Below, one piece after another: positions 10,580 to 53,021 of a DNA stretch of 53,021 nucleotides. Positions within the stretch are counted from its first letter, which is position 1. Each line of letters begins with the position of its first letter. The notes below the pieces were generated by a model, which saw only the letters and a list, made by a program, of their open reading frames with translations, did no database searches and had not been told where the DNA came from. The stretch is from Octopus bimaculoides (Eukaryota), in the NCBI RefSeq assembly GCF_001194135.2, contig NC_068985.1:108354048-108407068 (forward strand), written 5' to 3'. The position numbers were made by a program, and so were the translations under genes.

Positions 10580-10600
10580 TATATATAGGCATGTATATAT
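10383..10600. repeat. Compound (TACA)n/(GT)n/(TATG)n microsatellite, representative of many
   Basis: Seen directly; others at ~12115-12225, 23898-24055, 32430-32545, 46125-46192, 49080-49265 and 50090-50190. They produce spurious low-complexity ORFs. Confidence 0.98.
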
Positions 10601-11900: not shown

Positions 11901-12113
11901 GTCAAAAATAATGGCATATAGACCCTTTTACCATTTTTCATCTTCGTTCTCGAATATTTCTAAAGAATATCTGTATAGATAACCGTAACAAGTGATGTTA
12001 AATGCACTGCTAACATAGTAGAACACGGTGTTAACTTGTAGAAATATTCAATATATTTTATAGTATATTATGGTTGCATAACGTAATACTGCGTCTATAC
12101 AAGCCATTAATAC

Positions 12114-12144
<31 letters not shown>

Positions 12145-13870: not shown

Positions 13871-13999
13871 TCTTCCCTCACACATACACACGCACAGATA
13901 TACACATACATATTTTTATTTGATCATTTGTCGTTGTCCACGATGACCAAGGACGTCACATGGGTGAAGAAGATAGGGCACAGTGATTCCAGCTATGGC

Positions 14000-17247: not shown

Positions 17248-17325
17248 TTGTCTAGGTTCTCCATTGGCTGTCATCCCCAAATAAAATACAGTTCCCAACA
17301 TTACAAACAACAATCGCGGGGCCAT
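17248..17325 (-). CDS. ITIH: Gene A (ITIH-like) coding exon 1, signal peptide
   Basis: ATG at 17325; MAPRLLFVMLGTVFYLGMTANGEPRQ has a hydrophobic core; donor CAA|gtaagt, phase 0, matching exon 2 across a ~9.5 kb intron. Linkage to exon 2 is inferred. Confidence 0.75.
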
Positions 17326-21259: not shown

Positions 21260-23480
21260 AGTGCATTAATGAGTAAAGTGTTAGGAAAAATGCCGAAGTG
21301 GAAGGGCCCAGGACCAGATTGAGTTCAAGGGTACTGGTTAAAGAAATTCAGTAGTTTTCATGGGAGGCTGAGAGAACAACTTCAAGGTTGCCTTAAAGGA
21401 AGAATAATACCAGATTGGATGACTAGCGGGAGGACAAAACTCATCATGAAAGATAAGAGCAAGTGTAATACAGCTAGCAACTATAGACCAATTATTTGCT
21501 TACCATTAGTGTGGAAGCTGTTAACAGGAATGTTTTCAGAAAGCATTTACGAGCACCTTGACAACTAGAATTTACTGCCAGAAGAACAGAAAGTTTGCAG
21601 GAAGAAGGAAGATTAGAGAAGCGTATGATCTACTACACATAGACCAAGCTGTTCTAAATGAAGTAAAAGAAAGAAAAATCTAACAATAGCATGGGATAGA
21701 TTATAGGAAAGCTTATGACATGATCCCAGACTCATGGATAAGTGAATCTTTGAGTATATTCAGTATAGCAGACAACATAAGAGAGTTAATTAGCTGTAGC
21801 ATGAAAGAATGGAAAATAGATCTCAGTTTAAGAGAGACAGAAGTTCCCGAAGAAACTCTGATTGTAACAGCGGAAATGAAGCTGAATCATTAAGGGAAAG
21901 AAAGCCTTTCGCTCCTCAGTGGTTCAGTAAAGATGCATTTTCTAGGGGGACTCGTTATCCCCTTTAATATTTGTCTTATGTTTTATCCCCCTCAGTATTA
22001 AGGAAAGCAAAGGCAGGGTATCAGTTCAGAAATAGTAAAGGAAAAATTAACCATTTGCTCTACATGGATGATCTGAAGCTTTTTAGTAAGAACGAAAAAG
22101 AAGATTCCTTAATACAGACTGTAAGACTCTTCAGCAAAGATATAGGCATGGAATTTGGCATAGATAAGTGAGAATAGGACAGTTAGTCAACAGTGAAGGT
22201 ATCCAATTACCAGATGGTCAGGCATCAAAATCATTGAAAGGAGGAGAGTATCTAGGAGTATTACAATTTGACAGGGTACTAACCACAGAAATGAAAACGA
22301 ACATTTAGAAAGAGTACATCAGAAGGGTGAGGAAGCTAATGATGTCAAAGCTAAATGTTCCGAATTTAGTGAAGGCTGTAAATACTTGGGTAGTATCATA
22401 ATTTAGATACCGAACAGCTTTTCTAAATTAGACAAAAACTTGCAAAGCTAGACAGGCGAACTAGGAAGGAATTCAATACGAACGGAGAATTCTACCCTAG
22501 GGCTGGAGTAGCAAGATTATACCTACCTAGAAAGGAAGGCAGAAGTAGGTTAATATCAGTAGAAGACTGCGTGGAGTTAGCTAGTGTAGATATAGTCTTT
22601 TATGTAGGTAATAATGAAGAAAGGTTTTTAAAAGCTGCTAGAGTCACAGCAAAACAGGGAATCCAAAAACCCAAATGATGTTAAAAACCAGAAAAAAGAA
22701 CAAAATATCTGACTGGCAGAAGAAGGTGTTGCATAGCAGATTCCCAAAGATAGTTGCATCAAATAGTAATAGTGAGACATGGTTATGGTTGCAGAAAGGA
22801 AAGCTGAAGGAGACAGAAAGTTTGTTAGAAGCTGCACAAGATCAAGCATTAAGGACTAATTGGATAAAAGTCAAGATGGGCAAAAACTAAGTAGATTGAA
22901 ATGTAGATAATCTAAATCAAGAAGAAAGCTTTACTCACATGGTAAGTGAATGTAGCATGCTGGCACAGAAAGAATACAAGAAAAGACGTGACAATCTAGG
23001 GAAAGTAACCCACTGGGAGCTATGTAGAAAGCTAGGATTTGACCATACTGATAAATGGTATGAATATGAACCTAGCTAAGTACTAGAAAGTATGAAATAA
23101 AAGATGTTGCGCGACTTCAAAATTCAGACTGACAGAGTAACAGAAGCTAGAAGGCCTGATTTGGTAGTAGTAGATAAAGAGGATAGAAAGGGCCAGATAA
23201 TTGACTTTACAGTCCCAAATGATGAAAACATTAATATGAGAAGTATAGAAACATATCAAAGTGCCAGGACCCAGCCATTGAATTACAGAGACTATGGAAA
23301 GTGTAGGTAAAATGTATCTCAATAGTTATAGGTGCATTTGGAACTGTCCTTAAAGACCTGAACAGATGGATAGAGGAAATAGTCATAATACCCAGTTAAG
23401 TACAGCTCCAGAAAACAGTGTTATTAGGGACAGCTAGGATAGTTAGGGTGGTTCTTGGCAGCTAAGGTTACTTGTAGCCC
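21260..23480 (+). mobile_element. Decayed R4/Dong-clade LINE (RT plus restriction-like endonuclease)
   Basis: KGPGPD..QGYWLKKF; NYRPIICL; IDYRKAYD; HLLYMDDLKLF; FSKDIGMEFGIDK; DFKIQTDRVTEARRPDLVVVDK..IIDFTVP. Confidence 0.93.
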
Positions 23481-25650: not shown

Positions 25651-25665
25651 TTACACTCTACTAAC
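25651..25665 (-). CDS. Gene B candidate terminal coding exon (VSRV*)
   Basis: Strong acceptor gttcttttttcag; phase 0 gives GTT AGT AGA GTG TAA; AATAAA on the minus strand at 25538-25543. Confidence 0.4.
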   Translation of the reverse strand, partial: VSRV

Positions 25666-25960
25666 CTGAAAAAAGAACATATTCAATAATATATTCATAG
25701 AGGTACGATATTTAAAGACAAGCTGGGATGATGAAGAATACCTTTGATAATAAAGGGCCCAATGAGTGATAACAACAACGAAGCAACAATAATAATTTCA
25801 AAATACATTTATTAGCTGGAAAACGTGAGTGACTAGTACATATTTTTCTGCTTCAAATTTGATTAGGAACAAACATTTGTTGAAAAATGTACACCGTCCT
25901 CCAAATCCGTGTAGCAATTTCCGTGTAACAAAATATGCTGCTTTTTAGATATGTACTCAC

Positions 25961-26042
25961 AATATTTAAGTACAGTAGTTCTATAATGATTTTATTAATC
26001 ATTGGAGGTAATATATCCATGTGAAACAATTTAATGTAATCT
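25961..26042 (-). CDS. Gene B candidate exon (82 nt)
   Basis: catatttag|A...ATT|gtgagt; only the phase-2 entry is open, matching the previous exon; DYIKLFHMDILPPMINKIIIELLYLNI. Confidence 0.45.
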
Positions 26043-26064
26043 CTAAATATGTAACCAATAGTAG

Positions 26065-26107
<43 letters not shown>

Positions 26108-26204
26108 GTTATCAAATTCAGATATATTTCTATATAAAACAATTTTAATAAGGTAGATTGTTATTTCGCATTAAATCAGTATCAAACTCGTTCTTGCCTC
26201 TCAC

Positions 26205-26334
26205 ATTGTAAAACAGGGGGATAAACTTCCACTTGATGTCTTGTAATTTACTTTATTAAAAGTAGCTTCTTTGTGAGACAATACCATCTGGTTCGGTGCT
26301 TTTTCAATACATTGGAAGACCTTTGTATAGTCAC
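26205..26334 (-). CDS. Gene B candidate exon (130 nt)
   Basis: gtttctattttag|GT...AT|gtgaga; phase 1-2; DYTKVFQCIEKAPNQMVLSHKEATFNKVNYKTSSGSLSPCFT, 42 open codons. Confidence 0.5.
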
Positions 26335-26537
26335 CTAAAATAGAAACGCATTAACAAATGATTAATGCATATTCATCAGACAGTGGATCTTCGTAAACGT
26401 TTTTTTTTAGATGAATTTAAGACAGAAAACAGACTAGTTGTTTATATATAAATGTTTAAATAAATGTATTAATAAATATATAAATAAAACGTATAAATAA
26501 AACGTATATATAAAAAATACCAAATACCCATTTCCTG

Positions 26538-26754
26538 TGCGAGGAGGTGCTAAAAAGTTTCTGGTTTGGGGTAAGAGAAATACGGGGAAGTTAATTATGA
26601 CTTTAATTAACATATTCCCCTCTCAAATTCATACACTTATTGCAGCGGCCCTTTAGTTTTCCTAAGCACTGTAAAAGAACTCGGAAGTTTAGGCCTCCAA
26701 AAATAACTTTTGCGATACCCTTAAAGCTAGGAACTTTTCAGGAAGCCCCTCGAA
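26538..26754. mobile_element. Mariner-derived MITE (~215 bp)
   Basis: Imperfect TIRs gcgaggaggtgctaaaaagttt and aacttttcaggaagcccctcg; internal minus-strand remnant of a transposase C-terminus. Confidence 0.75.
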
Positions 26755-27002
26755 TATTATTCAAAATTTGGTTACTTTGGTTTTAAATAAAAATATGTTT
26801 TATTCATTTGCTAAAAATATTTTGTAAAAATGGCTATAATTTCAAATGGAATTCGGTCTACAAGAATAATTATACAGGAGTTTATTGGATGAATAGTAGA
26901 AGTCGCAAATAGTCAGTAAATGAATATTCCATGGACAACAAAAAAGTAGTTGTGTGTTGCTCCGCACAACTGACGTTTCATATACCGATTGAATTAATAT
27001 AA

Positions 27003-38137: not shown

Positions 38138-41100
38138 GGGGGTCAAGAGATCTCCTCCCGCTATTTGATGGCTACGAGAGACTTTCTCTCCGGGCTGTTC
38201 TGCTGGCGGGAGTGGGGTGTTGGTCCTGTTAAAAAGAAACCGGGTTTCTGAGAAAAAGTTAATATTTTCAGATCCAGAAGGTAGGCTGGTCGTCGTGGAT
38301 TTGACGCTCAGTCGTGGTAAGATTACCAGACTGGTTGCGATTTATGCACCCACTGAAAATGGGCAAAGTGCTCGGTACATCACGGTACATCTCGGTACAT
38401 CACATTCTTTAGGAGACTATAACATTCTACGACGCACGCGTAGATTATGATGGCTCGTGTTCTGATAGAAGAGTTAATGCTTGCTTCCTGGAACTGCTAA
38501 GCCACTTTGAGCTAGCAGATCCTTATAGGCTGAAATTTCCGAACGCTCCATTGTGGACATGGTCAAACAGCGACGGATCTTCTAGGTCATACCTAGATAC
38601 GGTGTTAATTAGAAAAGCAAATAAGGATATTGTTAGGTGTCCACAATTTTCCCCGGTCAGCTACAGTGATCATAAATTGGTCACCTGTACGCTCGACATA
38701 GATAAGTTATATAATAGAGGATCCGACTACTGGAAACTTAATACGTCCCTCTTGGCGATTAAGTAGTACAGAGGTGGAGTTAAGTTATTGATTCAGAGGG
38801 CGTTAACCGGATCTGTTATTAATAACAAATGGTGGTATGCCCTCAAGTGAGCCATTAAATTTGAGTCTATTATATATAGCATGAGTTTAGTGGCTAGAGA
38901 GACTAGGAAGGGATTAACATTAGCTAAGGACTTAGAGGAAGCAAAGGAATCTGGCTCTGCAGCTCAGGTGACCGTCAAGAGACTGGCGTTAAACCAGCAC
39001 CTCGAAGCCCAACATATGGGGTGCATTGTCAAAGCTAGGATTCTTACATTGGGTTGGGAAGGAATCAAGGCCGCAGGATGGGCCCGAGTGGTGGAAGCCC
39101 AACGTGGCAACGATGGCACAATTGGATCTTTGACGAACCAACGAAGTAAGTTGACAAACGAGCCTGTAGAGATGTGTAAGGTCTTTCAGGAGCCCTTCAC
39201 TCAGCTTTTCGGGGGTGGCGGTGGACGGGATAGTAGGAGGGACCTAACGGACTTCCTCGCCGGGGCAGGACGCGGAGTGTTGTGAAGGGCTGATCAAGCC
39301 TGAGGAGGTAATTGAGGCTATGGCGGACTGTGACACGGGTAAGGCGCCGGGACTGGATGTTCTGCCCTATGAACTGTATAAGAGTATGCCAGACTTGTTA
39401 GGGCACCTGCTGGCGAATGTCTATGCGAACTGGCAGCAGAATGGGTTCATTCCCAGATCTGTGCGCCGGAAAGTTGTGACTCTTATCAGAAATGAGCCGA
39501 ACAAGGGGGATTGCATTGATGACTATACTGAACACAGAGTTGAAGATTTTGGCCAAAGCGTTATCGAAAAGATTGGCGCGTGTCGCGGATGGCTTGATCG
39601 GAAAGGCACAGACATGTGCCGTTCCTGGTAGAACCATTCAGGATAATCTCCATGTTCAACGGTACACTGTAGCGGGGTTTAATAATGATTCTGGCAAAGG
39701 AGAGGTAGTGGTCCATTTAAACCAATCAAAGGCTTTTGATAGGGTGGACCATCATTATCTGGTGTCCATTCTGGCACAGTTCGGCTTCCTCAGGTGGATC
39801 ATTGAAATTTATCACAACATCGACTCGGTAGTTCGGGTGAACGGTTTTTATCTAAGCCGTTCAGCATCAAACGCTCGGTTCGTCAAGGATGTCATCTCTC
39901 CCCGCTTTTGTATGTAATGTCTCTTGAGCCATTGCTGCGAAAATTAAGTGACATTCTGAGACAGCCAGGTTGTGGAGAGTCGGTTTCAGCGTACGCGGAC
40001 GACATCATCATCACCGTAACCGAAATGGATCACCTACAGAGGGTAGGCAAGGCCATTGAGAAATACGAGGCGGTGGCAGGAGCAAAGGTTAATCGTGAAA
40101 AGTCAGTCGGCTTGCAGCTCGGTACCTGGAGAGGCAAGTCGATGCCTCCTGACAGCGTCGTAGGACGTTGGACGGAGGGTCCGATTAAGCTGCTAGGAGT
40201 CTGGTTTGGACCAGGCCTCCAAATAGAGAAGAACTGGACCGAGGTAGCGAGCAGGGTGGCCCTCATAGCCAAGACCTGGTCTCGGCGGTGGCTATCCCTG
40301 AAAGGGAGGGCGGAGGTGGCCAATGTGTTCATCGCNNNNNNNNNNNNNNNNNNNNNNNNNNNNNNNNNNNNNNNNNNNNNNNNNNNNNNNNNNNNNNNNN
40401 NNNNNNNNNNNNNNNNNNNNNNNNNNNNNNNNNNNNNNNNNNNNNNNNNNNNNNNNNNNNNNNNNNNNNNNNNNNNCGTGGTTGAACAAGCTGGAAAGCT
40501 GATGATGCGCAGGCACGCGCTGACGTTGAGGCATATGTGGTTCTATCTAGATGGCGAACGGGTGTGGTCACCCCGACAAAGCAGATGTTTTCCAAGTTCA
40601 CTTGTTTCGGTGGACTGGAGATCTGGTTCTATCATAGATCGAAGTTGAGTACATGGTTTACGGAGTGTCGTAAGTTTCTCAGGATATTCCATCTCTCGGG
40701 CAACGCCTGCGGTAGTGGTTCTACCACATTCTTCTTTAGAGGGTTGGTAGAGGCGAAATGTGACGATACCTTGGGGGAAGCCCTAGGTCTCGATGATAAT
40801 CCGCTGGCCAGTCTGGTCCAACGTACACTTGGGCCGAAGACACTGGATAACTTCCAGAAGTCTTTGGTATGGCAATGTTACCGAGGAGCCTTACCTGTCC
40901 GAGACAAGCTCGCAAGGCGTGGTGGCCCCGGCACACCGACCTGTCCAAGATGTGGGCGGGACAGGACAGAGAAACCGTCCCGCATGCTATTGTTCAGTGT
41001 TCGGAGGTGTCACATGTGTGGGTTTAAGCCGAACAACTGTTGTCAAGTACAGGAAGAGTACAGCTATCGACTGAGTCAATGGTAAAAAATTGACCCACCG

Positions 41101-41455
41101 GATTTCCTGTCGGAAGAAGGTAAGAATTGCTTTCTCATCATAGTAGCAATTGCGAGAGGTGATTTGGAAGACGCGAGTGAAAGGGTTAATAACAGGCATT
41201 TTTATTTCTGGCCCTGGGCTGGTGAATTTCTTCACCTTCCACCTAAGAAGGAAAATAGGGTTAGAGAAAAAACGCCTGTCCGTGAAAATATTTCAAGATC
41301 GATGGAAGAATGTCGCACGAATGTTGCGTATGGATGGGACCGCATGAATACAATGCAGGATGAACCTAAAGCATAAGTGGTGAGGCGGGGCTCGTGGGGT
41401 CCGAGCATATCCCGCCTTCCCACTCCATTCTGTAATGTTGTCTTGTAATCATTCG
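38138..41455 (+). mobile_element. Tx1/L1-clade LINE ORF2, 5'-truncated and frameshifted
   Basis: APE: EGRLVVVD, VAIYAP, WTW..SYLD, SDHKLV, YWKLNTSLL. RT: KAPGLD, QSKAFDRVDH, SAYADDI, KLLGVWF. C-terminal CPRC. Confidence 0.93.
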
Positions 41456-41484
41456 AACTCTTCATATTTATGTAAAATTGCGAA

Positions 41485-41660
41485 ATGCTTAGCGGTATTT
41501 CTTCTGTTTTTACGTTCTGAGTTCAATTTCCGCCGAGGTCGACATTGCCTTTCATCCTTTTGGGGTCGATAAATTCAGTACAAGTTGCATACTGGGTCGA
41601 TCTAATCGACTGGTCCCCTCCCACTAAATTTCGGGCCTTGTGCCCAGAGTAGGAAAAAGT
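41485..41660 (+). mobile_element. Octopus tRNA-derived SINE, type 2 (Nin/Deu-like core)
   Basis: Core gttctgagttcaa..ccgccgaggtcgac..gcctttcatcctttt.ggggtcgataaa; other copies at ~11150-11430, 12730-12900, 20290-20400, 32085-32370, 49270-49460 and 50735-50935. Confidence 0.88.
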
Positions 41661-42399
41661 ATGTTATAAACTCCACGGACACGAAGGAATTTCTGAAGTA
41701 AATCCATTCGTATTATATCCATACATTTGATGACATTTTGTCGAATGGATGTGTTGAGAGCAAATTATTCTCACAACAAAATTTCCATTTCATAATTTCG
41801 GAACCAAAAGAAGAATACAACTGATTCATTTCATGGACTTGCAGAAATTACTTTCTCTTCCAGTACGAAACTTTCAGAAGAAATCTGAACATTGATACTA
41901 CCAGACATGAAGAAATCACCAAAAGAAGCAACGTACTTGAAAAGTATTTTGATTTGTACAGAAATGAACAAGTCGTTGATTGGTTGAAATTACTCAAATA
42001 CAGCTATAACACGAAATAACTTCTAAAATGCCAACTTATGTCAAAAATGTTCAAAGTAAACCGTGTTCTGCGAGAGACATTCCACCAGTTTACGAAGTTT
42101 GAAACTGCTTAGTTAAAAAAAAAAAAATGAACACATCCGAGGGTATAAAGATTTAAGCTGTTGTTGAGAAAAATATTTCCGACATGGAGGATTAGAAAAC
42201 ATAAATATTGGAAAAGACCTCCCTGTAAAACGATGATTCACATTGGTTGTCTATATGCCGAAAACATGACTGCGGCTCAATGTTCTGTAAATACTGTAAA
42301 GGCTATAGAACGTGACTGGACAGTTGCATCGGAGACAACAAAATTGCGACATTCATGAATAGACACTTTCGACTACGTTTGCACGCGTGGGTTTATTGC

Positions 42400-42932
42400 T
42401 ACAGTTTTAAATAGAGCCTTAATCTCAATTCAGACGACTATGTGAAGCAGCTGGAGGGTGAGGTCAACCCTTGACTGTATAGGGCTGCTGCCTGAAGGCC
42501 ATATGTGTAGCTGCAGGATTCAACTCTTTGTCATACTACTGGAAAGAGTCAGAAATGGCTGTCGGAGAATACTTATAGCTACACAAACCCAGGTTTCGGG
42601 CATCCTGATTCTCCGATTTTAATGAAATGGATTATCGTGTATGGAAGCAAGTGAGAAAGATAACCATCTACTCTACTTGCAACACAGAAGCCAGGCTGGG
42701 TGTCAAGAGGAAGGTGTTCAAAAATCTTGTCAGGAACACAGCAAGGAACGCATGCACCAGGTTCCGGAGCCGTTGTGGAAGCTGGGGACGGCTCCTTTCA
42801 GTAAATACCCATTTGCTGGCCATTTAGTTGATATGTTTAGTTATTTAAAAATCCTTCTAATTCAGGATGGGATATTGTGTTTTCTTTTCCTTGTATTCAA
42901 ACTGTTAAATTTAGTCCGAACATCCTGTACAT
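42400..42932 (+). mobile_element. maT/DD37D-like transposon 3' fragment
   Basis: RPYV.LQDSTLCHTTGKSQKWLSEN; end ccgaacatcctgta resembles a TIR. Confidence 0.7.
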
Positions 42933-43133
42933 GCATGATCTTTTGTGTTTATGTAATATTATTAGTTATCCATATTTTCAGATTGTTGATATAATAAAAT
43001 CAATCTGAAAATATAAACACAACGTTTTATGAATTCAATGATGTGAATTAAAACCTCAAATTAATGTTTTAAACTAGAAAATGACTGATTTAAACGAGAA
43101 AAATGTAATTGGAAATATTTAATAGTTACATAC

Positions 43134-43148
43134 CGTGTGAAGGACGAA
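43134..43148 (-). CDS. Gene B micro-exon 5 (15 nt, family B)
   Basis: Exon identical to 43437-43451, 303 bp away; could be a real duplication or an assembly duplicate. Confidence 0.65.
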
Positions 43149-43436
43149 CTGAAAAAAAGAAAAGATAAGAATGATGTACATATAAATTATAAACCTGTTA
43201 AGATATACATTTTTTGGTTCATTTATAGTTACTCAAAGGAAATAATTTAACATTTTCCTCCAAATAAAATTATTATTTGCTAAAGTGAATTACTAACAAA
43301 TCAATTTGAAAATATATACACAGCATCTTATGAATTCAATAATGTGAATTAAAACCTCAAATTAATGTTTTAAACTAGAAAAATGACTGATTTAAACGAG
43401 AAAAATGTAATTGGAAATATTTAAATAGTTACATAC

Positions 43437-43451
43437 CGTGTGAAGGACGAA
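43437..43451 (-). CDS. Gene B micro-exon 4 (15 nt, family B)
   Basis: ctttttttcag|TTCGTCCTTCACACG|gtatgt; phase 1-1, VRPSH. Confidence 0.72.
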
Positions 43452-43650
43452 CTGAAAAAAAAGAAAAGATAAGAATGATGTACATATAAATTATAAACCT
43501 GTTAAGATATACATTTTTTGGTTCATTTACAGTTGCTCAAAGGAAATAATTTAACATTTTCCTCCAAATAAAATTATTATTTGCTAAAGTGAATTACTAA
43601 CAAATCAATTTGAAAATATATACACAGCATCTTATGAATTAGTTACATAC

Positions 43651-43665
43651 CTTGTGAAGGACGAA
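43651..43665 (-). CDS. Gene B micro-exon 3 (15 nt, family B)
   Basis: (t)ncag|TTCGTCCTTCACAAG|gtatgt; phase 1-1, xRPSQ. Confidence 0.75.
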
Positions 43666-44089
43666 CTGAAAAAAAAAAAAGATAAGAATGATGTACATAA
43701 AAATTATAAACCTATTAAGATATACATTTTTTGGTTCATTTATAGTCGCTCAAAGGAAATAATTTAACATTTTCCTCCAAATAAAGTTATTATCTGTTAA
43801 AGTGAATTACTATTGAATTTCTTAAAATACTTAAAGCGTTCGCTAAAGCATTGTTATTTAAAAAAAAGTATATTACTATTTAAACATAGAACATACGTAG
43901 TCAAATCCAGTTGTAGAGCACAGTTTGAAACCATTAATTGCTCGCCTATGGGACTCCAACGCATGGTCAGGAAGACAAGAAAAGGATTGATCTCTAACAT
44001 TCACCACCTTAAGGTAGACGTTGACGGTTTTTACCAACATAAAACTAATAAGGGAAAAGGAATGTTATAATGCTATGGAAACTCCACTA

Positions 44090-44884
44090 TAGGAATGAAC
44101 ATATATTTATGTAGTGCAGAGGATTACATGCTGCGAACATGAAAAACAGTTGCATTCTGTTGTCAAGGAAGCTTGCAAATTCGCAAGAAAAATTGACGCT
44201 AACTCTATATTATACCCACGTGTTTATACATTTTGTGTGGGCCAACTTGATGCTAGTGTCTAATTTAATGGGTGTTGTTTGTTTGAGCTTCTGTCTAGCC
44301 AAATTTGCTTTAGCAAACTTCTCAAGGCCAAAATCCATCCAGATATCATTGCTAAACTCTTTAACACTTGTTCGCAGCCCGTCTATCTCTTGGTGATTTT
44401 TTGCAAACGGTCTCAGATTGTCCATGCAAAAAGAAATGGTTTATTATCCTAAAAATTCTGTAGCCATTCCAATGTTCAATCGGTTTGAAAGTGGGACTAG
44501 CGCCATACAGAAAAGTAATGAGGAAAGGGAGTCACTTTAATGGATGCCTCGCGTGATACTGAAGCTGTTGGAATGGCTTATTTCATTACTATGGTTAAGA
44601 AAAAGACGTGTTCTATTTGGCCATGGTGTTTCGTATATTTTTGGGAGATGACAAGATCTTATATATATACTCGAAGTCCTTCATATATAGATGTGAGTTC
44701 GTGTCCACAGCTAGCCACATACACTTTTTTCTGCAAAATAGGGGTAGTTTATCCTGTTCAGGCTATATTATTAGCATTATTCTGCGATTGAGAATTTAAA
44801 ATCATTTCTTTAACTTTCTAAGACATCTCAACGCTTCTAAAAGCAAACTTCGTTTGTTTATTTACGTTTGTCGTAATTTGAATT

Positions 44885-44933
<49 letters not shown>

Positions 44934-46121
44934 ATTATATGCATATATCCATACATATATGTACATACCGACATCTATATGTATACATACAAGCATATAT
45001 GGGTACAGGACCTCACAAAAAAACCAAAAAAAAAAAAAACGTTAAACACAATGAGAAACGAAGACATAAAGACGAAGACAGAAAACGAATTTTTTTTTGA
45101 ACAACGAAAGAAACAAACAGAGAAACGAGACATGCACCATATTACCCTTCTTCAGTTGTCCCTGCTCCATCTACTCCGCGTTTCAAAGGCAAGGACAATA
45201 CGCGACTTCGTTGGAGCAGTCCTTTCCGCAAGCAAATTAATTAAAATTTGGAATACCCATATATGCTTGTATGTATACATATAGATGTCGGTATGTACAT
45301 ACATGTATGGATATATGCATACAATTATATTTTATATATGTTATTATATACCTCCAAGTAAGTTTTATCTTAATATTTTCTAGTGTGCACCCTACTACTA
45401 TTGCTGTCACTTTTCTGTCTATATCTCTCTCCATCTCTTGTTCTTCATCCTTTCTTACTTTCTCTCCCAACCCTCCCCGATTCTTCTCTTCCTTTCACCG
45501 TTCCCTCTCTCACTCCTCCTCCTTGACCCTCTCGTCGCTGATACGTGACGAAAGGGATTCTTTCTTTCTACTTCCTGCCTTCCTACAGAAAAGACGTGAA
45601 TATTTTTCTCTCTCATTCACATCTAATTTCGGGTTCAAAATAATTTTTCTATCGTCTTGGCCTAACAGCCCTTACCGTTTGTTCTCACTGACCTGTCTTA
45701 TTTTTACTGTCTTGTTCTCACTGTACTGTTCTTGTTTACACTTTCACCCTCCGCAAAAATGTCCAAATTTTAATTAATTTGCTTGCGGGATGGACTGCTC
45801 CAACGAAGTCGCGTATTGTCCTTGCCTTCGTAAAGCGGAGTAGATGGAGCAGGGACAACTGAAGAAGGGTAATATTCTTCATGTTGCATGTCTCGTTTCT
45901 CTGTTTCTTTTTTTAGTTGTTCGAAAAAAAAGTTCATTTTATGTCTTCGTCTATATGTTTTCGTCTCTCGTTGTGTTTAACATTTTTTGCGATGCCCTGT
46001 ACTCGTATATGCTTGTATGTATACATATAGATGTCGGTATGTACATATATGTATGGATATATGCATATAATTATATATTATGTTATTATATGATCAAAAG
46101 CCACGCATTGCCTCCAAGTAA

Positions 46122-46195
<74 letters not shown>

Positions 46196-46850
46196 GACTT
46201 CGAGTATCCATCGATGTTGGACACTACCAAATGCTTTCCTGTAGTCTATCCTCGGCGTACGCAGTATTTTGTTTTGCTGCGGCAACTTTCTAAACTTTTT
46301 CTATTTATGAGTTATTGATCTTTGCACCCATAAGAATTATTTTAGTGCCTTTTTGTGCTTGTGGAAGGATAACGTTCTCTGTAAAGAAAGTGTACATTCT
46401 TTCAGTTATTATAGATTTGGGGGTCATTTAAGTGGTGTTGAGAAATGTCATTTGTCGGTAATTCTTCAGGATTTTCGTATCATCAGATTTTGGTAGATAT
46501 TTGCTCAGGATTCTGAATGATATTTATGGACACAGTAAAAATTTCGTGTACATCTCTCAAACAATTCAGCTATAAGTTAGGTCGCGGGATTTTCCATTAA
46601 TAAGGCTTTATAAGAGTACACCCTATCTCTTCAATTACATCCTGTGACCCCCTTCTCACGTTCTATCCCGTCAATTTCAGCATTAAACTCTTCCTTGTTA
46701 TCTTCTTCCAGAACTCTTCCACGTCCTCAATTTTAAATGTCTCCTTTACCTCTATCCTCGTTTTGCCAATTTGCCTATGCAATTTCTTCGCGTCTGTTTT
46801 GAATATTTTTTTCTGACAATAAAGTTAGCATCTTTTTTCATACCTTCTAA
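44090..46850 (-). mobile_element. One R4/Dong LINE remnant split by an internal insertion (44880-46195)
   Basis: Motifs in the correct minus-strand order: KNYRQMTFL and YGCKDQ (46450-46310), IDYRKAFGSVQHRWILEVL (46250-46195), RGIH.SDSLS (~44540), FSNDIWMDFGLEK (~44340). Confidence 0.8.
44925..46095. mobile_element. Penelope-like non-autonomous element with inverted and direct terminal repeats
   Basis: 44925-45250 is the inverted copy of 45765-46090; 45254-45350 directly repeats ~46000-46090; microsatellites on both flanks; related sequence at 52660-53021. PLE assignment inferred from architecture. Confidence 0.6.
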
Positions 46851-47026
46851 GCCGTAGGGCTTTGTAACAATATACGCTGTTTCGATAATGTGTATTTCGA
46901 ATATATTAATTTTTTTTCGTAGCGACACATGCCATGTTTGTTGATAGAAATAAAAATCGGCTGTTTAAGATTTTAACTAAAGAAACATATATAAAGTGAA
47001 ATGAAACAACAAAATAGTCTACTTAC

Positions 47027-47056
47027 AATAATTAAATCTGAATGGATTAGTCGCAC
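47027..47056 (-). CDS. Gene B micro-exon 2 (30 nt, family C)
   Basis: ttcttacatttcag|GTGCGACTAATCCATTCAGATTTAATTATT|gtaagt; phase 1-1, GATNPFRFNY. Confidence 0.75.
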
Positions 47057-48352
47057 CTGAAATGTAAGAATTTTAATTGTTAGGAAATACTTATCAATTG
47101 TCATATACGGTCGTTTAAACGTATTAAGCTACATATAGTTTAAATTAATTGTTTAATGTAAATCTGTTATAAAGTAATAATACAACTACTTGACTAAGAA
47201 ATGTGATTTTTATTTGTGGTCATTTAGTAGTATGCTCAACGGAGATATTTCCTTCACAGCTATATTATATCGTATATTTTACAGTGATATATAATTTCTG
47301 TTACATAAATATTTTATGCTTATTTTTCATAAACCTGATTTACATTAATGTTGTATACTAAATATGAAATATCTGAGAATAAATATTTTAGGAATGTTGA
47401 ACGAAAACGAAACAACTATGCCGTGCTTGTGAAAATAATTTCTGAGGAAATACATATTTACTGTTAGGTTTTAAAATAACAGGAAAAATATAACAGATGT
47501 TCAGAAAAATTGTATCAGAAAAGGTTTTTTTAGCTAGATACGAAATATACAGAGATTAAAATAAAACATATTGAATTCAACATCAAATCAAATTAAGTAG
47601 GACTAATTGTAAAAGGCGAGACGACTATTTTTTTTTTAAAAACTACTCCCCAGCGTTGGTGGGAGACAAGCACAGACGCAAAGACATGCATAAACATGTA
47701 TGTATGTATGTATGTATGTATGTGTGTGTGTGCGTATATATATATATGTATATATATATATTGTTGTGTCTGAGGAGAGTCATTCTCTTTTAGTACCTTA
47801 TTATTTAAAACACTCTCTGGTAAAATTTTCATTCATTTACTTATTTATTTTTCCTAAAATTTTCGTTGCGTCTTGCAACCTTTTCAATGGTCGTTGACTC
47901 TGAGTAGTTGGTAGATACTTCTGAGGAGAAACATGACGTTATTGGTTAAATTTGGAAATCACATGATAAAGCTTTGTCCAACCATTACTTTTTGTGGGTT
48001 CATCTCCCAAGGGAAAGATTGTTTTCGTTTGCTGTGCCCGCTTCCCGTAAATATAATGAGGTTAGTGGTTTTTGTGGCTTTCAGAGTTAAGTTCGACTCT
48101 TATTTTTAGCAATCGCTGGGCTTCTTTCAGTTTCTGTCTGCCAAATCCACTTTCTTTGGTCAGCTCGAGACTATAGCAGAAGACTTAACATGGAACCATA
48201 TAGTTGGAAAGCAAACTTCTTACCACTCATTCATCCCAGTACGGTGCAATGTTAAATGTAATCTCGAAAGACTTAAACACCTACTTTAAAATTTTTTTAC
48301 CGAATAAGACATATACAGAAAGTAAAAGGAAAAAAAGGAATATTCTACTTAC

Positions 48353-48367
48353 CAGTGAGAGTTATCT
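48353..48367 (-). CDS. Gene B micro-exon 1 (15 nt, family C)
   Basis: cctcaaatttcag|AGATAACTCTCACTG|gtaagt; phase 1-1, xITLT; upstream intron homologous to that of the 47056 exon. Confidence 0.7.
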
Positions 48368-49081
48368 CTGAAATTTGAGGAATTTTAATTGTTAGGAAAT
48401 GCTTTTCAATATTCAAGTTCTATTGTTTTAATCATATTAAATTAAGCACAATTCAAAATTAGTTAGTTGATATAAATCAGTGAAAAAGAAGAATACGATG
48501 ATCAAAATAAGAAATATGGCTGCACTTCTAAATATGTGCAAGTGAACTTTTTTTGTCTGAATCAATGTCAGTTTTCCACCCTTTTGTCACCACCACAATC
48601 TTTGATGTCTTTCCACCACTACAAGTAATTGACCTGGGTGTCTAATTTGGTCCCTTTCACTATGTTGTGTTGTCATTTTCATTAAACTTCAGGAATAATA
48701 ATGAGCATCTTTAAAGACAAACGAAAGGGTTTAAATATTAAAAGTACATAAATTAAAGCTTTAATTATCTCGAACATGCAAAGGAATTGATCGATGGACC
48801 TCAGATTTAATAGAGACAGGAAGTTGTAAAGATAATTAATGGACATGCTGTAAACAATATATATATTTACTGTATATGTTATTATTTCCATTGCATCCTG
48901 TTGCGATGGCATATTTATAACAGCAACGGTGTTTCAAATTCCTTATTTAACAGTTGAAATTTAGCTAAATTAATTATGTAAAAATTTCTATAGTTCATGA
49001 AGTTTGTGCCATGAACAATTTTGAATAACAGGAAGGGAATTTTGTAATATCTTTGAGATGTCTTGCTTTATATTCTTCCAA

Positions 49082-49125
<44 letters not shown>

Positions 49126-49224
49126 GTCAGTCTGCCTGCCTACCAGCCTGCCTACCTACCTACATACTACCTACCTACCTACCTATCTATCTATCTATAT
49201 GTGTGTTTGTGGTTTGCAAAATCA

Positions 49225-49268
<44 letters not shown>

Positions 49269-49585
49269 GCCGGTGAATTGGATATAATGCTTAGAGGCCT
49301 TTCGTCCGTCTTTATGTTATGAATTCCCCGAATTCCACGTGGGTTGAATTAGCCTTTGATCCTTGGGAGTCGATAAAATAAGTAAAGTTCAACACTGTGG
49401 TTGATGTAATCGACGACTAGTCCCCTTCCCCAAAATTCAGACCTTGTGCCTATAGTAAAAAGGATTATTATTATTGTTTGACTATCGACAGGTATTGCAC
49501 ATCTCTCACGTTAGCTTGTTATTATTTCTATTGTGACACGAAGTTGTATATTAAACATTTGCTTTTGTTTTATGGATCTTTTGAC

Positions 49586-49912
49586 GATCTTTTGGTTAAA
49601 GTATCACAATAATGAAAATGTTTGTTCGGCAATTTCCGTACAATTTTTCTTTTCTTTAATCGTGTATGTTTATGTATTTTTGTGTATCTATTATGTGCTT
49701 GCATGTATGAATGTATGTATATTTGAGTATGCATGTTTATACATATACACATATATGCAGTACTTACATAAAAATACATACATACAAACGTATAAAGACA
49801 TAATGCATACACAAAAAATACGCATAAACACAAGCGATTCTGCTAAAAAAATAAAAATTTTATACGGAAATTGCCGAACACTTTCGTTATCGTGATATTT
49901 GAATTAGAAGAT
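49586..49912. mobile_element. MITE-like fold-back element
   Basis: Imperfect ~60-bp TIRs (49586-49648, 49853-49912) sharing gttcggcaatttccgta. Confidence 0.6.
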
Positions 49913-50939
49913 TACCGGTAAGTTTGTTTCCCTCTGTAGTCCTTAGGAGCCAAATTGACATTTGCTTAGCGAACATGCTCCTCAGTTCTTGTTTAAAAAA
50001 GAAAGATGGCAGACGAGGATTGTTCATTGGCGGAAAAGAACAGCCAGCTATCCGCAGAACAGAACAGCCAAGATGTGAAAACACTGACGCCAACAGCAAC
50101 CACAGTAACAGTAGCAGCAGTAGTAGCAGCAACAATAGTAGTAGAAGCAGCAGCAGCAACTACTACTACTACTACTACCACAACAGCAGCAGCACAAAAT
50201 AGTATGAATCTAACTTTCCATCATTAAAGCCTCACCATCGCAGGAATAACAAAAGTGAAGAATACAGTTCTATATTTAAGAGATGAGGAATTATGTACAT
50301 TATTTACAATTGACGGATATTTGTCCTCATCTTGTTTGTTGTTAACACAACGTTTCTTGAATAATGGTTGTTGAACAAAACACCAATGTTTCGAGAGCTG
50401 AATTATTCAAACTCCAAATAATTACTTTCAACACATGGCTATGATACTCCCCCACTACTTCTGCTCGTGATCAGAGATACCCATAACGTCAGATACCAAA
50501 GGACAGGCTCAACTGGTGAAGGTCAATCAACTGACAAACAAATCTGTAATATTGAGCAGACTATTTGCTGTAGCCCATCTTTTACACCAATACAAAACAA
50601 TGTACGCAATAACTCTTTCAATCATTTAAGATTAGAAGTCATGAGAGCCACTGCTTCGTACTGCATCAGGGCATTCTTCTTCTTCTTCTTCTTCTTCTCC
50701 TTCTTCTTCTCCTTATTATTATTATTAGAGAATGCAGTGAGCTAGCCGAATCTTTAGAACGCCAGGTAGAATGCATAGTGGCATTTTGTCCGTCTTAACG
50801 GTCTGTGTTCAAATTCCGGCGAGGTCGATTTCGCCTTTCATTATTTCGGGATCGATAAATTAGTACCGGAGTCGGGGTGATCGATTATCCCTTTCCCCAC
50901 AATTTCCAGGCTTCCTGCATTTTCTAGAAGGGATTATTA

Positions 50940-51460
50940 TTATTTGCCGATTCTGCGATGAAGAGATTGAAATAGTGGACCTCTTAGTCTCTGGATTTAA
51001 ACTTTGAGCACTAGTAGAGCATGAATGAAGATATAAGAGGTTAATATGTCGGCATTATAGAATCAAAGCTGTTCACAAATGGTATAATTATTCCTTTGAG
51101 TCTATAACGTTGTACTGATTCTTTGGGGCTTTCCTGTACGTACAGACAAAGCTATCAAAAGTAATAAACCGGATAGTATTGTAAAAGTCCAAACTATATT
51201 CTGTTTATTGACATGTGTATTTTTTGTTTGTGATCATAATATTGAGGGAAAGGAGTTTGACAAACTTAGGAAACAAGTTTGCTAATTGAAATCTAGAAAA
51301 TGTGACATCTCAAAGCGGTTACAATACCAGCACTTGGAATTATCAAAAAAGGATCTGACGATATTTTGAGAATTATCTCTGTCTTACCATCTCTGCAAAA
51401 ACGTACACAAGATTGTTTTAACAGTTTTTCTCACGCGTATTGAGAAAAGCATTGTTGCTG
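50940..51460 (+). mobile_element. R4/Dong LINE 3' fragment (CCHC/RLE region)
   Basis: CRFCDEEIEIVDLLVSG; WGFPVRTDKAIKSNKPD; ALGIIKKG. Confidence 0.7.
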
Positions 51461-51649
51461 TGAGAATGACAGCCATTCATATTAATATTTTTTTCCTTTT
51501 TCATAACTTTATTCGATTTTGTAAACGAACGATCTAGAGTATTTATTTTAATAGACTATCAATCTATACAGTGGGTCTCTTTGCCCTAGGTACCAGGAAG
51601 AAACAGAGCAAGAAGTGCAAACAAAATTGAAAGAAGAAAATCTCATAAC

Positions 51650-52585
51650 AATAATGGTTTCAAATTTTGGCACATGACCATAAGTTCGCGGGAGGGCGTA
51701 AGTCAATTACATCGACCCTGGTGTTCAAATGGAATTTATTTTTGTCGACCCCAGAGACAAAGTTGACCTCGTCAGAATTTGAATTCAGAACATAAAGACG
51801 GGCAAAATGCCACTAAGCATATTACCTGGCGCAGTAACGATTCTGCCAGCTCACTACTTAAGTTTCAAATTTTGACACAAGGCCAGGAATTTTGGAGAGG
51901 GGGTAAATCTATTACATCAACCCCATGCTCTACTGTTGCTTACTTTATCTACCCTGGAAGGATGGAATGTGAAGTCGATCTCAGCGAATTAATAATAATA
52001 ATAATAATATTTTCTAATAAAGGCACAAAGCCTGAAATTAAGGGGAAAGCAGATAGTCAATTACATCGACCCCAGTATGCAACTGGTACTTGTTTGATCG
52101 ACTCCGAAATAATGAAAGGCAAAGTCAAGCTCCGCAGTATTTGAACTCAGAAGGTAAAGACGAACGAAATGCCGCTAAACATTTTATCTGACGTGCTAAA
52201 GATTCTACCAGCTCACCGCCTTAGGTTTCAAATTTTGGTACAAGGCCAGCGATTTTAGGGAACTGGGTTGGCCGATTACATCAATCCCTGTTACTTAGTT
52301 TATCGACCCCGGGAGGATGAAAGCTAAAATCGATCTCGGCGAACTCATAATCATAATTATTATTTCAAATTTTTGCCACTAGGGCAACTTGAAGGAGGTG
52401 GGGTTGAGTCGATTACATCGACCCCAGTGTTCAACTGATACATATCTTAATCGACCCCGAAAGGATGAAAGGCTAAGTCGACCTCGGAAGAATTTGAACT
52501 CAGAACGTAGCGACGGGCAAAATACCGTTATGGATATCATCCAGCATGCTAACGTTTCTGCCAGCTTACCGCCTCCGTCATAATA
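51650..52585 (-). mobile_element. Cluster of about five same-orientation type-2 SINE copies
   Basis: Repeated attacatcgacccc..gtac..gatgaaaggc.aagtc.acctc blocks. Confidence 0.85.
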
Positions 52586-53021
52586 ATAGTATTGAAATGT
52601 GAAGAAGCTGTGAGTTTGTTTATATTCAAATAGGCACAAAAGAAATAATTGATATAGATTAAAATATCAAAACATTTCTCCAGCGTTCGCTATTTTACAC
52701 TCGTTCTGGTCTAACGACCCTCAATGTTTCTTTTCGTTCGGTTTCCTTGTATATCTCCACTGTCCTGTTTTTGTTTCCAACTTTGACCCTCCATAAATCC
52801 AAAATTTCATTTTGCTATTTATGGGAGCAACTGTCTTCGAAGACACATATTGTCGTTCAGAGCTCGAAATGAGGAGTAGATAGAAAACCGACATCTGATG
52901 AAGGGTCGTTCATTGTGTTACTTGTCCTGTTTTACATTTTTCTCTCATTGTTTGCGTATTTAACTCTTTTGTTTTCTTTTTTCATGCTGTTTACTATTGG
53001 TGATGTCCTGTGCCCATATAT

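What the first reader, a model, noticed from the sequence alone, without database searches (positions are those of the whole stretch)
25651..48367. Hidden minus-strand gene built from a chain of symmetric phase-1 micro-exons
Thirteen AG/GT-bounded segments (15,30,15,15,15,18,18,30,18,18,18,84,105 nt) all lie on the minus strand, are all multiples of 3 and are all phase 1-1. Most have a polypyrimidine tract and a gtaagt/gtaggt/gtatgt/gtaaga donor. Joined in order they give a stop-free peptide: xITLTGATNPFRFNYFRPSQVRPSHVRPSHGLLAMKGLNGMRPHDIPFDSSRNHHVMRGHHVMRGNHGMRVLPALGKPATTGKPTTTGKPLPIFPHAPAIALKPLNCKLDLCFTDNSLCRNQTRIMFLNDKYA. None of this appears in the ORF track. Because every exon is symmetric, any subset can be skipped in frame, so combinatorial isoform diversity is possible. 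This architecture is known from Schistosoma micro-exon genes; I know of no description in cephalopods but cannot search. The 5' end was not found in the window.
Basis: partly seen in the sequence, partly recalled or inferred. Interest (0 to 1): 0.9.

Follow-up and report, generated by a model that had tools for sequence, protein, structure and literature searches.

The report
Tandem micro-exon array, probable unannotated gene
A 19-kb stretch of the minus strand carries thirteen small, same-phase, in-frame segments with good splice signals, made by repeated local copying of exon-plus-intron units; it looks like part of a real gene for a basic, repetitive protein, but I found no RNA or cross-species evidence.

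Summary
All 13 segments lie at the stated places on the minus strand. Each is bounded by AG and GT, is a multiple of 3 in length and is phase 1-1. Joined, they read open in one frame only. No segment touches an assembly gap; the gaps lie in inferred introns, three of them inside microsatellites.

Plus-strand and shuffled controls give almost nothing. The segments are not 13 independent events. They sit in tandemly duplicated exon-plus-intron units: family A (e3, e4, e5, e8), family B (e6, e7, e9, e10, e11) and the pair e1/e2.

In two families the exon has diverged significantly more than its flanking intron, without indels. Length differences between paralogous exons are 15 nt. Family B keeps Met plus a basic residue through different codons. 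This is most simply explained by coding constraint.

My reading is a real micro-exon array inside a gene whose 5' end, and probably 3' end, are unresolved. It encodes a basic, Pro/Leu/Arg/Thr/Gly-rich modular protein. It is separate from the inter-alpha-trypsin-inhibitor-like gene downstream. The likeness to schistosome micro-exon genes is architectural only. Combinatorial splicing, secretion and the cephalopod origin are untested here.

The parts
48353..48367 (-). e1, 15-nt phase 1-1 micro-exon (x-ITLT-G)
   Evidence: Context tttcag|AGATAACTCTCACTG|gtaagt. Recovered by the GC-contrast scan. Paralogue of e2: flanks 71% identical, exon 5/15 identical. The pyrimidine tract is weak.
47027..47056 (-). 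e2, 30-nt phase 1-1 micro-exon (ATNPFRFNY)
   Evidence: Context tttcag|GTGCGACT...TTATT|gtaagt. Its flanks are homologous to those of e1, and the exon is 15 nt longer.
43651..43665 (-). e3, 15-nt micro-exon, family A (RPSQ)
   Evidence: Recovered by the strict scan. The unit 43812-43637 is 94% identical to the e4 unit.
43437..43451 (-). e4, 15-nt micro-exon, family A (RPSH)
   Evidence: Recovered by the strict scan. Context ttttttttcag|TTCGTCCTTCACACG|gtatgt.
43134..43148 (-). e5, 15-nt micro-exon, family A (RPSH)
   Evidence: Recovered by the strict scan. The unit is 96.8% identical to the e4 unit over 343 bp.
38073..38090 (-). e6, 18-nt micro-exon, family B (LLAMK); the most diverged copy, with a weak acceptor
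   Evidence: Context tatttag|GCCTTCTCGCCATGAAGG|gtaggt. Flanks are 75-78% identical to the other B units and the exon 50-61%.
37547..37564 (-). e7, 18-nt micro-exon, family B (LNGMR)
   Evidence: Recovered by the strict scan. Flanks are 91-93% identical to those of e9-e11 and the exon 61-72%.
37021..37050 (-). e8, 30-nt micro-exon, family A (HDIPFDSSR)
   Evidence: Recovered by the strict scan. Flanks are about 75% identical to the e4/e5 units. The 3' 15 nt align with the 15-nt A exon, and an upstream acceptor adds 15 nt.
35007..35024 (-). e9, 18-nt micro-exon, family B (HHVMR)
   Evidence: Recovered by the strict scan. The 1.09-kb unit is 84.7% identical to the e10 unit.
33779..33796 (-). e10, 18-nt micro-exon, family B (HHVMR)
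   Evidence: Recovered by the strict scan. Aligned with the other B units in A1.
32844..32861 (-). e11, 18-nt micro-exon, family B (NHGMR)
   Evidence: Recovered by the strict scan. Aligned with the other B units in A1.
30179..30262 (-). e12, 84-nt phase 1-1 exon (LPALGKPATTGKPTTTGKPLPIFPHAP), with an internal in-frame 18-nt repeat
   Evidence: Context ccgcag|TTCTTCC...CTCCTG|gtaaga. GC is 0.50 against flanks of 0.18-0.36. Recovered by the GC-contrast scan. The acceptor is weak.
29150..29254 (-). e13, 105-nt phase 1-1 exon (IALKPLNCKLDLCFTDNSLCRNQTRIMFLNDKYA). An alternative in-frame GTAAGT donor follows 24 nt (exon end 29231). If neither donor is used, the ORF ends ...YASK-TGA.
   Evidence: Context ctttctag|CCATTGCC...ATGCAA|gtaagt.
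22939..23019 (-). Unconfirmed further phase-1-compatible exon candidate: 81 nt, or 21 nt from 22959, using a shared gtgagt donor
   Evidence: It is the only other multiple-of-3, phase-1-open hit on the minus strand in both scans. Nothing links it to the chain.
25651..25665 (-).
   Evidence: Sequence only. Speculative.

Best explanation
The chain is a real array of coding micro-exons that belongs to one minus-strand gene.

How it arose (shown): repeated local tandem duplication of exon-plus-intron units. Family A is e3, e4, e5 and e8. Family B is e6, e7, e9, e10 and e11. e1 and e2 form a pair.

How it would work (inferred): because every unit is symmetric and phase 1-1, each duplication or loss adds or removes a 5-10-residue module without breaking the frame. 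The spliced message would encode a strongly basic, low-complexity protein (pI about 11, no Glu or Trp). Its modules are [F/V]RPS[Q/H] three times, G-x-x-x-M-[R/K] five times, and a Thr-rich GKP(A/T)TT repeat, followed by a short tail with three cysteines.

Less certain (inferred): phase-1 symmetric exons are typical of extracellular proteins, so I take the protein to be most likely secreted. No signal-peptide exon lies in the window, so the 5' end is probably beyond 53021. The 3' end is either e13 itself (...YASK*) or an exon between 29.1 and 17.5 kb.

The gene is distinct from the downstream inter-alpha-trypsin-inhibitor-like gene. In-frame exon skipping is possible but not shown.
For: The strict scan gives 10 hits, all multiples of 3 and phase-1 open, against 0 on the plus strand and a mean of 1.32 in shuffles. 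The GC-contrast scan gives 11 of 16 minus-strand hits as multiples of 3 and open, against a 6:6:4 modulo-3 spread on the plus strand.

Only one frame of the 399-nt concatenate is open: 0 stops against 6 and 12. Exon GC is 0.30-0.61. The 50-nt flanks are 0.16-0.28, except 0.36 upstream of e12.

The exon evolves differently from its surroundings:
- Family B has 12/18 variable exon columns against 103/347 in ungapped flanks (Fisher p=0.003). For e7, e9, e10 and e11 alone the figures are 8/18 against 47/352 (p=0.002). The exon has no gap columns; the flanks have 39-44.
- In e1/e2 the exon is 5/15 identical and the flanks 172/242 (p=0.007).
- Both exon length differences within families are 15 nt.

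Family B keeps ATG in all five copies. The next codon is AAG, CGC, CGT, CGT or CGC, so it stays basic through differences at up to all three codon positions.

The units occur only locally, in one orientation and in transcription order. A dispersed repeat in the same window occurs in both orientations. The e12 internal repeat has an 18-nt, in-frame period.

Splice consensus matches the neighbouring gene: ttttcag| at the acceptor of its VIT-domain exon and |GTAAGT after its candidate first exon.
Against: There is no transcript, junction or cross-species evidence of any kind. No homologue was found in 5.8 billion proteins or in Pfam. The database evidently lacks the host lineage, so this is weak evidence against.

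No first exon with a signal peptide was found in the window, and the 3' end is unresolved.

The statistics rest on about five independent unit types, not 13. e3/e4/e5 and e9/e10 are too recent to be informative. e1, e2, e6 and e12 have weak pyrimidine tracts.

A rough hand count of codon changes in family B, made by eye on 5 codons and not by any tool, gives about 7 non-synonymous and 4 synonymous changes. That does not show positive selection.

Homogenisation of the flanks by gene conversion could produce part of the exon/flank contrast.
Confidence: 0.62

Rival explanations
1. Variation-generating micro-exon gene in the schistosome sense. The array is spliced combinatorially, with exons skipped in frame, to give a pool of secreted protein variants. 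The exons are under diversifying selection.
For: All exons are symmetric phase 1-1, and none of the 78 possible joins creates a stop. Exons are hypervariable relative to their conserved introns in two families. Several acceptors are weak (e1, e2, e6, e12), which often goes with alternative use. Exon sizes of 15-30 nt and introns of 0.2-5 kb fall within the ranges reported for schistosome micro-exon genes (PMC10526429).
Against: No isoform data exist. No signal peptide was found. The hand count of codon changes in family B (about 7 non-synonymous to 4 synonymous) does not exceed neutrality. Arrays of symmetric exons in collagen, elastin and the titin PEVK region are largely constitutive (my own knowledge, not checked here). 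Micro-exons are 210 of the 399 nt seen.
Confidence: 0.2
2. Not a functional gene. The region is tandemly duplicated non-coding DNA, or the decayed remnant of a former gene, whose units happen to carry splice-like signals. The frame properties were inherited by copying, not kept by selection.
For: Duplication alone explains why many copies share AG/GT boundaries and length. e4 and e5 are identical in the exon, e3 differs from them by one base and e9 from e10 by one base. No homologue, no gene start and no clear gene end were found. AT-rich sequence gives many weak AG...GT pairs: 102 relaxed candidates of 36 nt or less on the minus strand, with a uniform length modulo 3.
Against: It does not explain why the short segment between AG and GT is GC-rich and diverges faster than its flanks yet never gains indels. 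It does not explain why paralogue length differences are 15 nt, or why Met plus a basic residue is kept through different codons. It does not explain why the unrelated unit types e12 and e13 share the same phase and open frame.
Confidence: 0.14
3. The chain is an N-terminal extension or an alternative 5' part of the downstream inter-alpha-trypsin-inhibitor-like gene (VIT plus VWA domains) on the same strand.
For: It has the same orientation. The nearest recognisable coding exons downstream belong to that gene, at 17325-298. e13 ends in a good donor.
Against: The exon that begins the VIT domain starts in phase 0 (ttttcag|ACA GCA...). Joining e13, which ends in phase 1, to it gives a stop after 11 codons (read from the sequence). 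A typical signal-peptide first exon with a phase-0 GTAAGT donor lies at 17325-17248: MAPRLLFVMLGTVFYLGMTANGEPRQ. That gives the gene its own start.
Confidence: 0.04

Closest known systems
Schistosoma micro-exon genes (MEGs)
   Same: Many very small symmetric exons, mostly 15 bp in schistosomes and 15-30 nt here. Ten to twenty exons are separated by introns of 0.1-5 kb. The products have no homologues elsewhere. The coding parts evolve fast. In-frame exon skipping is possible (PMC4350168, PMC10526429).
   Different: No sequence relation. No signal-peptide exon was seen. Micro-exons are only 53% of the CDS seen. Alternative splicing and secretion are untested. These genes are reported as apparently restricted to platyhelminths (PMC4350168), so any likeness would be convergent. 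Here the array is visibly built from recent tandem copies of whole exon-intron units.
Spider flagelliform silk gene (Nephila Flag) and Argiope MaSp2
   Same: Iterated exon-intron units within one gene, whose introns are nearly identical to each other while the repetitive exons differ more (PMC3563967, citing Hayashi and Lewis 2000). Here the flanks are 91-94% identical against 61-94% for the exons among e7, e9, e10 and e11.
   Different: The silk exons are large and encode long ensemble repeats, not 5-10 residues. The protein composition is unrelated.
Small-exon arrays of structural proteins (collagen 54/45-bp exons, tropoelastin, titin PEVK)
   Same: Tandemly duplicated, frame-preserving small exons, each encoding one peptide module (my own knowledge, not checked here).
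   Different: Those exons are usually 27 nt or longer. Collagen exons begin in phase 0. The families are defined by recognisable motifs such as Gly-X-Y that are absent here.
Neural microexons regulated by SRRM3/4
   Same: Exons of 3-27 nt with strong splice sites and conserved flanking introns (my own knowledge, not checked here).
   Different: They are single exons inserted into conserved genes, not tandem arrays making up a repetitive coding region. No UGC motif is evident next to the acceptors here (one search lists the acceptor sequences).

Membership tests
Schistosome-type micro-exon gene (MEG) | Most of the coding region is made of very small symmetric exons, multiples of 3 and typically 6-36 bp | tested here: inconclusive
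   Eleven of 13 exons are 15-30 nt and all are multiples of 3. They make up 210 of the 399 nt seen (53%), and the ends of the CDS are unknown.
Schistosome-type micro-exon gene (MEG) | An N-terminal signal peptide encoded by a longer 5' exon | tested here: not met
   No ATG exon with a hydrophobic core and a phase-1 donor compatible with e1 lies in 48368-53021. The 5' end may lie outside the window, so the feature is absent from the data rather than shown to be absent from the gene.
Schistosome-type micro-exon gene (MEG) | Protein variants produced by alternative splicing (exon skipping) | not testable with these tools
   No transcript data are available. Only the permissive property was shown: all 78 joins are stop-free.
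Schistosome-type micro-exon gene (MEG) | Accelerated evolution of the part that encodes the mature protein | tested here: inconclusive
   Paralogue exons diverge more than their flanks (p=0.002-0.007). No orthologue dN/dS is available, and the hand count for family B is about 7 non-synonymous to 4 synonymous changes on 5 codons.
Schistosome-type micro-exon gene (MEG) | Sequence membership in one of the described MEG families; platyhelminth host | tested here: not met
   No hit in Pfam or in the protein database. The window carries a metazoan inter-alpha-trypsin-inhibitor-like gene, and its taxon could not be verified.
Tandem exon-duplication array of a repetitive protein (generic class) | Exon-plus-intron units that are homologous to each other, in one orientation and adjacent | tested here: met
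   Families A and B and the pair e1/e2. Units of 0.3-1.1 kb are 73-97% identical and have no copies elsewhere in the window.
Tandem exon-duplication array of a repetitive protein (generic class) | Frame-preserving units: symmetric phase and open frame across all copies | tested here: met
Tandem exon-duplication array of a repetitive protein (generic class) | The units are transcribed and spliced into one mRNA | not testable with these tools
   No RNA data are available.

The most novel reading that the evidence does not exclude
A micro-exon gene of the schistosome type that arose independently outside flatworms. It would be a cassette array of 15-30-nt symmetric exons with hypervariable coding segments held in conserved intron scaffolds. 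Combinatorial splicing would give a family of secreted basic peptides or proteins.
Probability: 0.2. Interest if true: 0.75.

Novelty: new variant of a known kind. Interest (0 to 1): 0.5.

Why it matters
If the array is transcribed, it is a gene that ORF-based and most homology-based annotation cannot see.

It would also be an example, outside flatworms, of an architecture reported as apparently restricted to platyhelminths (PMC4350168). The window preserves the copying steps, whole exon-intron units at 73-97% identity. It therefore shows directly how such arrays grow, and that the coding segment diverges faster than its intron scaffold.

The predicted product is a basic, Pro/Leu/Arg/Thr/Gly-rich protein with nine histidines, a Thr-rich segment and a three-cysteine tail. 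That would be a candidate secreted or material protein worth locating by tissue.

If it is not transcribed, it is a caution that tandem duplication can multiply splice-like, in-frame segments.

Tried and rejected
- Protein homology for the joined peptide: nothing in 5.8 billion proteins or in Pfam, even at E up to 10.
At 34 aa, any detectable hit would already have shared words with the query.
- Identifying the host, to test whether its proteome is in the database. The inter-alpha-trypsin-inhibitor-like exon has a best hit of 63% identity on an unnamed Logan contig. The LINE reverse transcriptase has a best hit of 48%. No names or accessions were returned. A literature search for the two run accessions found nothing. 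The taxon stays unverified, and the negative homology result says little.
- An exact scan of metagenome contigs with a 29-mer from the invariant family B intron stretch: no match.
- Literature: 'micro-exon gene' with octopus gave 0 papers. 'microexon' with octopus gave 4 papers, of which 3 were listed; judged from their titles and abstract openings, none concerns arrays of this kind. A broader mollusc query gave only irrelevant papers.
- Search for a signal-peptide first exon upstream of e1, with strict and relaxed donors. Candidates either create TAG with e1 or lack a hydrophobic core or a usable donor.
- Poly(A) signals after e13. Two ATTAAA lie about 500 nt downstream, but such hexamers occur about 1.9 times per kb in this window, so they are uninformative.
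- Proximal against distal intron conservation in the e9/e10 units. The units are uniformly similar and too recent to show a gradient.
- Rfam and tRNA scans of the whole window found nothing.
- A transposon origin for the A and B units was rejected within the window, because the units are local and in one orientation. Genome-wide copy number could not be checked.
- CpG decay as the cause of exon hypervariability was rejected by inspecting alignment A1. Only one or two of the 12 variable columns are CG to TG/CA changes.

Full report
WHAT IS THERE

Translating the minus strand located all 13 segments of the finding. The exact coordinates are in the parts list. Each segment follows an AG and precedes a GT. 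The donors are gtaagt (e1, e2, e7, e11, e13), gtatgt (e3, e4, e5, e8), gtaggt (e6, e9, e10) or gtaaga (e12). The lengths are 15, 30, 15, 15, 15, 18, 18, 30, 18, 18, 18, 84 and 105 nt.

The other two frames contain 6 and 12 stops. The inferred introns are 199 to 5043 nt long.

GAPS

No exon is nearer than about 150 nt to a run of N, and all five gaps lie in inferred introns. The gaps at 33017, 34017 and 35257 have (TA)n or (TG)n on both sides. They sit where the other family B units carry the same microsatellite, so they look like ordinary assembly breaks in simple sequence. The gap at 40336 interrupts a LINE reverse-transcriptase ORF on the plus strand.

Because every exon is symmetric, the reading frame does not depend on any gap length. 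What the gaps leave open is the number of units. More copies could be hidden in them.

IS IT MORE THAN CHANCE?

- Strict scan. It requires at least 70% pyrimidines upstream of AG, a length of 9-36 nt and a GTAAGT-like donor. It returns 10 minus-strand hits, all multiples of 3 and all open in phase 1. Eight are claimed exons. One is the 24-nt internal-donor version of e13, and one is new, at 22959-22939. The plus strand gives no hit. In 200 dinucleotide shuffles the mean is 1.32 hits (maximum 6), and 0.28 (maximum 2) for hits that are also multiples of 3 and open.
- Looser scan with GC contrast. It adds the requirement that the segment be at least 15 points richer in GC than its flanks. It returns 16 minus-strand hits, of which 11 are multiples of 3 and phase-1 open and 10 are claimed exons. 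The 16 plus-strand hits have lengths modulo 3 of 6:6:4.
- Relaxed scan without GC contrast. The background is uniform modulo 3, at 38:36:28.

The signal is therefore specific to these segments. Exon GC is 0.30-0.61. The 50-nt flanks are 0.16-0.28, except 0.36 upstream of e12.

THE EXONS ARE COPIES

- Family A. e3, e4 and e5 lie about 200-300 bp apart and are 94-97% identical. e8 is about 75% identical to them.
- Family B. e6, e7, e9, e10 and e11 share homology over 0.34-1.09 kb, at 76-94% identity.
- e1 and e2. Their flanks are 71-73% identical.

All copies have the same orientation and lie within the chain. Neither family recurs elsewhere in the 53 kb. A dispersed repeat of about 170 bp, with copies at 52.5, 41.5, 32.3, 12.8 and 11.3 kb, occurs in both orientations. 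This is local tandem duplication, not transposon insertion, as far as one window can show. It also means there are about five independent unit types, not 13.

WHAT THE COPIES SAY

Copying alone would explain the shared boundaries and lengths. It does not explain how the copies have diverged.

In family B, 12 of 18 exon columns vary, against 103 of 347 ungapped flank columns (Fisher p=0.003). Without e6, the most diverged copy, the figures are 8/18 against 47/352 (p=0.002). The exon has no gap column and the flanks have 39-44. For example, e7 and e9 are 61% identical in the exon and 93% in the flanks.

The e1/e2 pair shows the same pattern: 5/15 identical in the exon against 172/242 in the flanks (p=0.007).

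The two length differences between paralogous exons are both exactly 15 nt (e1 15 against e2 30; e3, e4 and e5 15 against e8 30). In e8 the extra 15 nt come from an acceptor that has moved upstream.

Within the variable family B exon, ATG is invariant. The following codon is AAG, CGC, CGT, CGT or CGC. It stays basic even though AAG and CGC differ at all three positions. Only one or two of the 12 variable columns look like CpG decay (by inspection).

A short GC-rich segment that changes faster than its surroundings, never gains indels, changes length only in threes and keeps Met plus a basic residue is most simply explained as coding sequence under its own constraint.

The contrast could arise from diversifying selection on the exon. 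It could also arise from homogenisation of the introns, as in the Nephila Flag gene, whose introns are nearly identical within the gene (PMC3563967). My hand count of codon changes in family B is about 7 non-synonymous to 4 synonymous on five codons. That is too small to tell the two apart.

e3, e4 and e5, and also e9 and e10, are too recent to be informative. e8 against e4 (10/15 in the exon, about 75% in the flanks) shows no contrast.

THE PRODUCT

The joined peptide is strongly basic (pI about 11) and has no Glu or Trp. It is rich in Pro, Leu, Arg, Thr, Gly, Asn and His. It is made of short modules:
- [F/V]RPS[Q/H], three times;
- G-x-x-x-M-[R/K], five times;
- GKP(A/T)TT, from an in-frame 18-nt repeat inside e12;
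- a tail with three cysteines (e13).

Pfam finds nothing in it.

Phase-1 symmetric exons are characteristic of extracellular proteins (established knowledge). I therefore infer a secreted, disordered, modular protein. This step is not shown.

THE ENDS OF THE GENE

Upstream of e1 there is no ATG exon with a hydrophobic core and a compatible phase-1 donor.

At the 3' end, e13 has two in-frame GTAAGT donors, after 24 nt and after 105 nt. If neither is used, the frame stops two codons later, at ...DKYASK-TGA. e13 may therefore be the last coding exon. The other candidates are a segment at 23019/22959-22939 and the acceptor at 25665, which is probably why the finding starts at 25651. None of these can be chosen without RNA.

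THE NEIGHBOUR

The minus strand from 17325 down to at least 298, near the window edge, carries a gene with a VIT domain (Pfam E=8e-18) and a VWA domain. These are the domains of an inter-alpha-trypsin-inhibitor heavy chain.

The exon that begins its VIT domain starts in phase 0 at 7765. A textbook signal-peptide exon with a phase-0 GTAAGT donor lies at 17325-17248: MAPRLLFVMLGTVFYLGMTANGEPRQ. Joining e13 to the 7765 exon gives a stop after 11 codons (read from the sequence).

The micro-exon chain is therefore a separate upstream unit, not the 5' part of that gene. The splice sites of this neighbour match those of the micro-exons: ttttcag| at the 7765 acceptor and |GTAAGT after the candidate first exon.

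EXTERNAL EVIDENCE

None could be obtained.

- The joined peptide has no homologue.
- The database holds nothing close to the host. The neighbouring gene's exon reaches 63% identity at best, and the intronic LINE 48%. All hits are unnamed. The negative result therefore says nothing about whether the gene is annotated in the source genome.
What can be said is that this is AT-rich metazoan DNA (35% GC), with GT-AG introns, LINE elements and microsatellites.
- A metagenome scan with a 29-mer from the invariant intron stretch found nothing.
- I found no paper describing micro-exon gene arrays in octopus.

COMPARISON WITH WHAT IS KNOWN

The architecture matches the description of schistosome micro-exon genes: 10-20 exons, mostly 15 bp and multiples of three, and introns of 0.1-5 kb. 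Their products are secreted proteins without homologues that evolve fast, and the genes are said to be apparently restricted to platyhelminths (PMC10526429, PMC4350168).

Membership is not established. There is no sequence relation and no signal peptide in the data. Splicing is untested, and micro-exons are 53% of the CDS seen. Any likeness would be convergent.

The pattern of conserved introns with more divergent exons within one gene is closest to the spider Flag gene (PMC3563967). The generic class is the tandem exon-duplication array of repetitive proteins such as collagen, elastin and the titin PEVK region (my own knowledge, not checked here).

VERDICT

I put about 0.6 on a real coding micro-exon array, within which combinatorial splicing remains open. 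I put about 0.2 on the fuller schistosome-like reading. About 0.14 goes to non-functional splice-like repeats or a dead gene, and about 0.04 to a link with the downstream gene.

The finding is worth a junction-level look in RNA data. Until then it is an in-silico gene model.

Noticed in passing
window 298-17325, minus strand: Inter-alpha-trypsin-inhibitor heavy-chain-like gene. The candidate first exon, with a signal peptide, is at 17325-17248. The VIT domain is encoded from 7765 down to about 6984 and the VWA domain at 2288-421. The gene appears to run off the low end of the window. An unnamed Logan contig carries a 63%-identical homologue of the large VWA exon.
   Followed up: partly
window 38881-41085, plus strand: A degraded LINE-type retrotransposon, with RVT_1 and zf-RVT domains, frameshifts and the 40336-40476 gap inside it. 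It lies antisense in the 5-kb e5-e6 intron and accounts for most of that intron's length.
   Followed up: partly
window 36007-35933, minus strand: A partial copy (73% identical) of the upstream intron part of a family A unit, between e8 and e9. A (TA)n microsatellite lies where the exon would be. This may be a dead unit of the array.
   Followed up: no
window 46083-45762 and 44921-45252: An inverted repeat of 340 bp at 86% identity, with arms about 500 bp apart, inside the e2-e3 intron. It may be a foldback or terminal-inverted-repeat element.
   Followed up: no
window 52574-51645; also 12898-12725, 11356-11184, 41482-41662 (opposite orientation), 32375-32130: A dispersed repeat of about 170 bp at 70-79% identity, present in both orientations and tandemly at the high end of the window. 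It behaves like a SINE or other interspersed element and served as a contrast to the local A and B units.
   Followed up: partly
window 13000-15500, minus strand, and 36261-36563, plus strand: Further open stretches that read by eye like retroelement or transposase remnants. Pfam found nothing in the pieces tried.
   Followed up: partly
window 22939-23019, minus strand: A segment with good splice signals, 81 nt or 21 nt long with a shared gtgagt donor. It is a multiple of 3, open in phase 1 and encodes three cysteines. It is the only such hit outside the chain, and whether it is a downstream exon of the same gene is unknown.
   Followed up: partly
window 49887-50159: A trinucleotide repeat that reads as a run of about 19 leucines on the minus strand and as a serine-rich run on the plus strand. 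It lies upstream of e1, in a region with a 326-bp self-complementary stretch (49587-49912).
   Followed up: no
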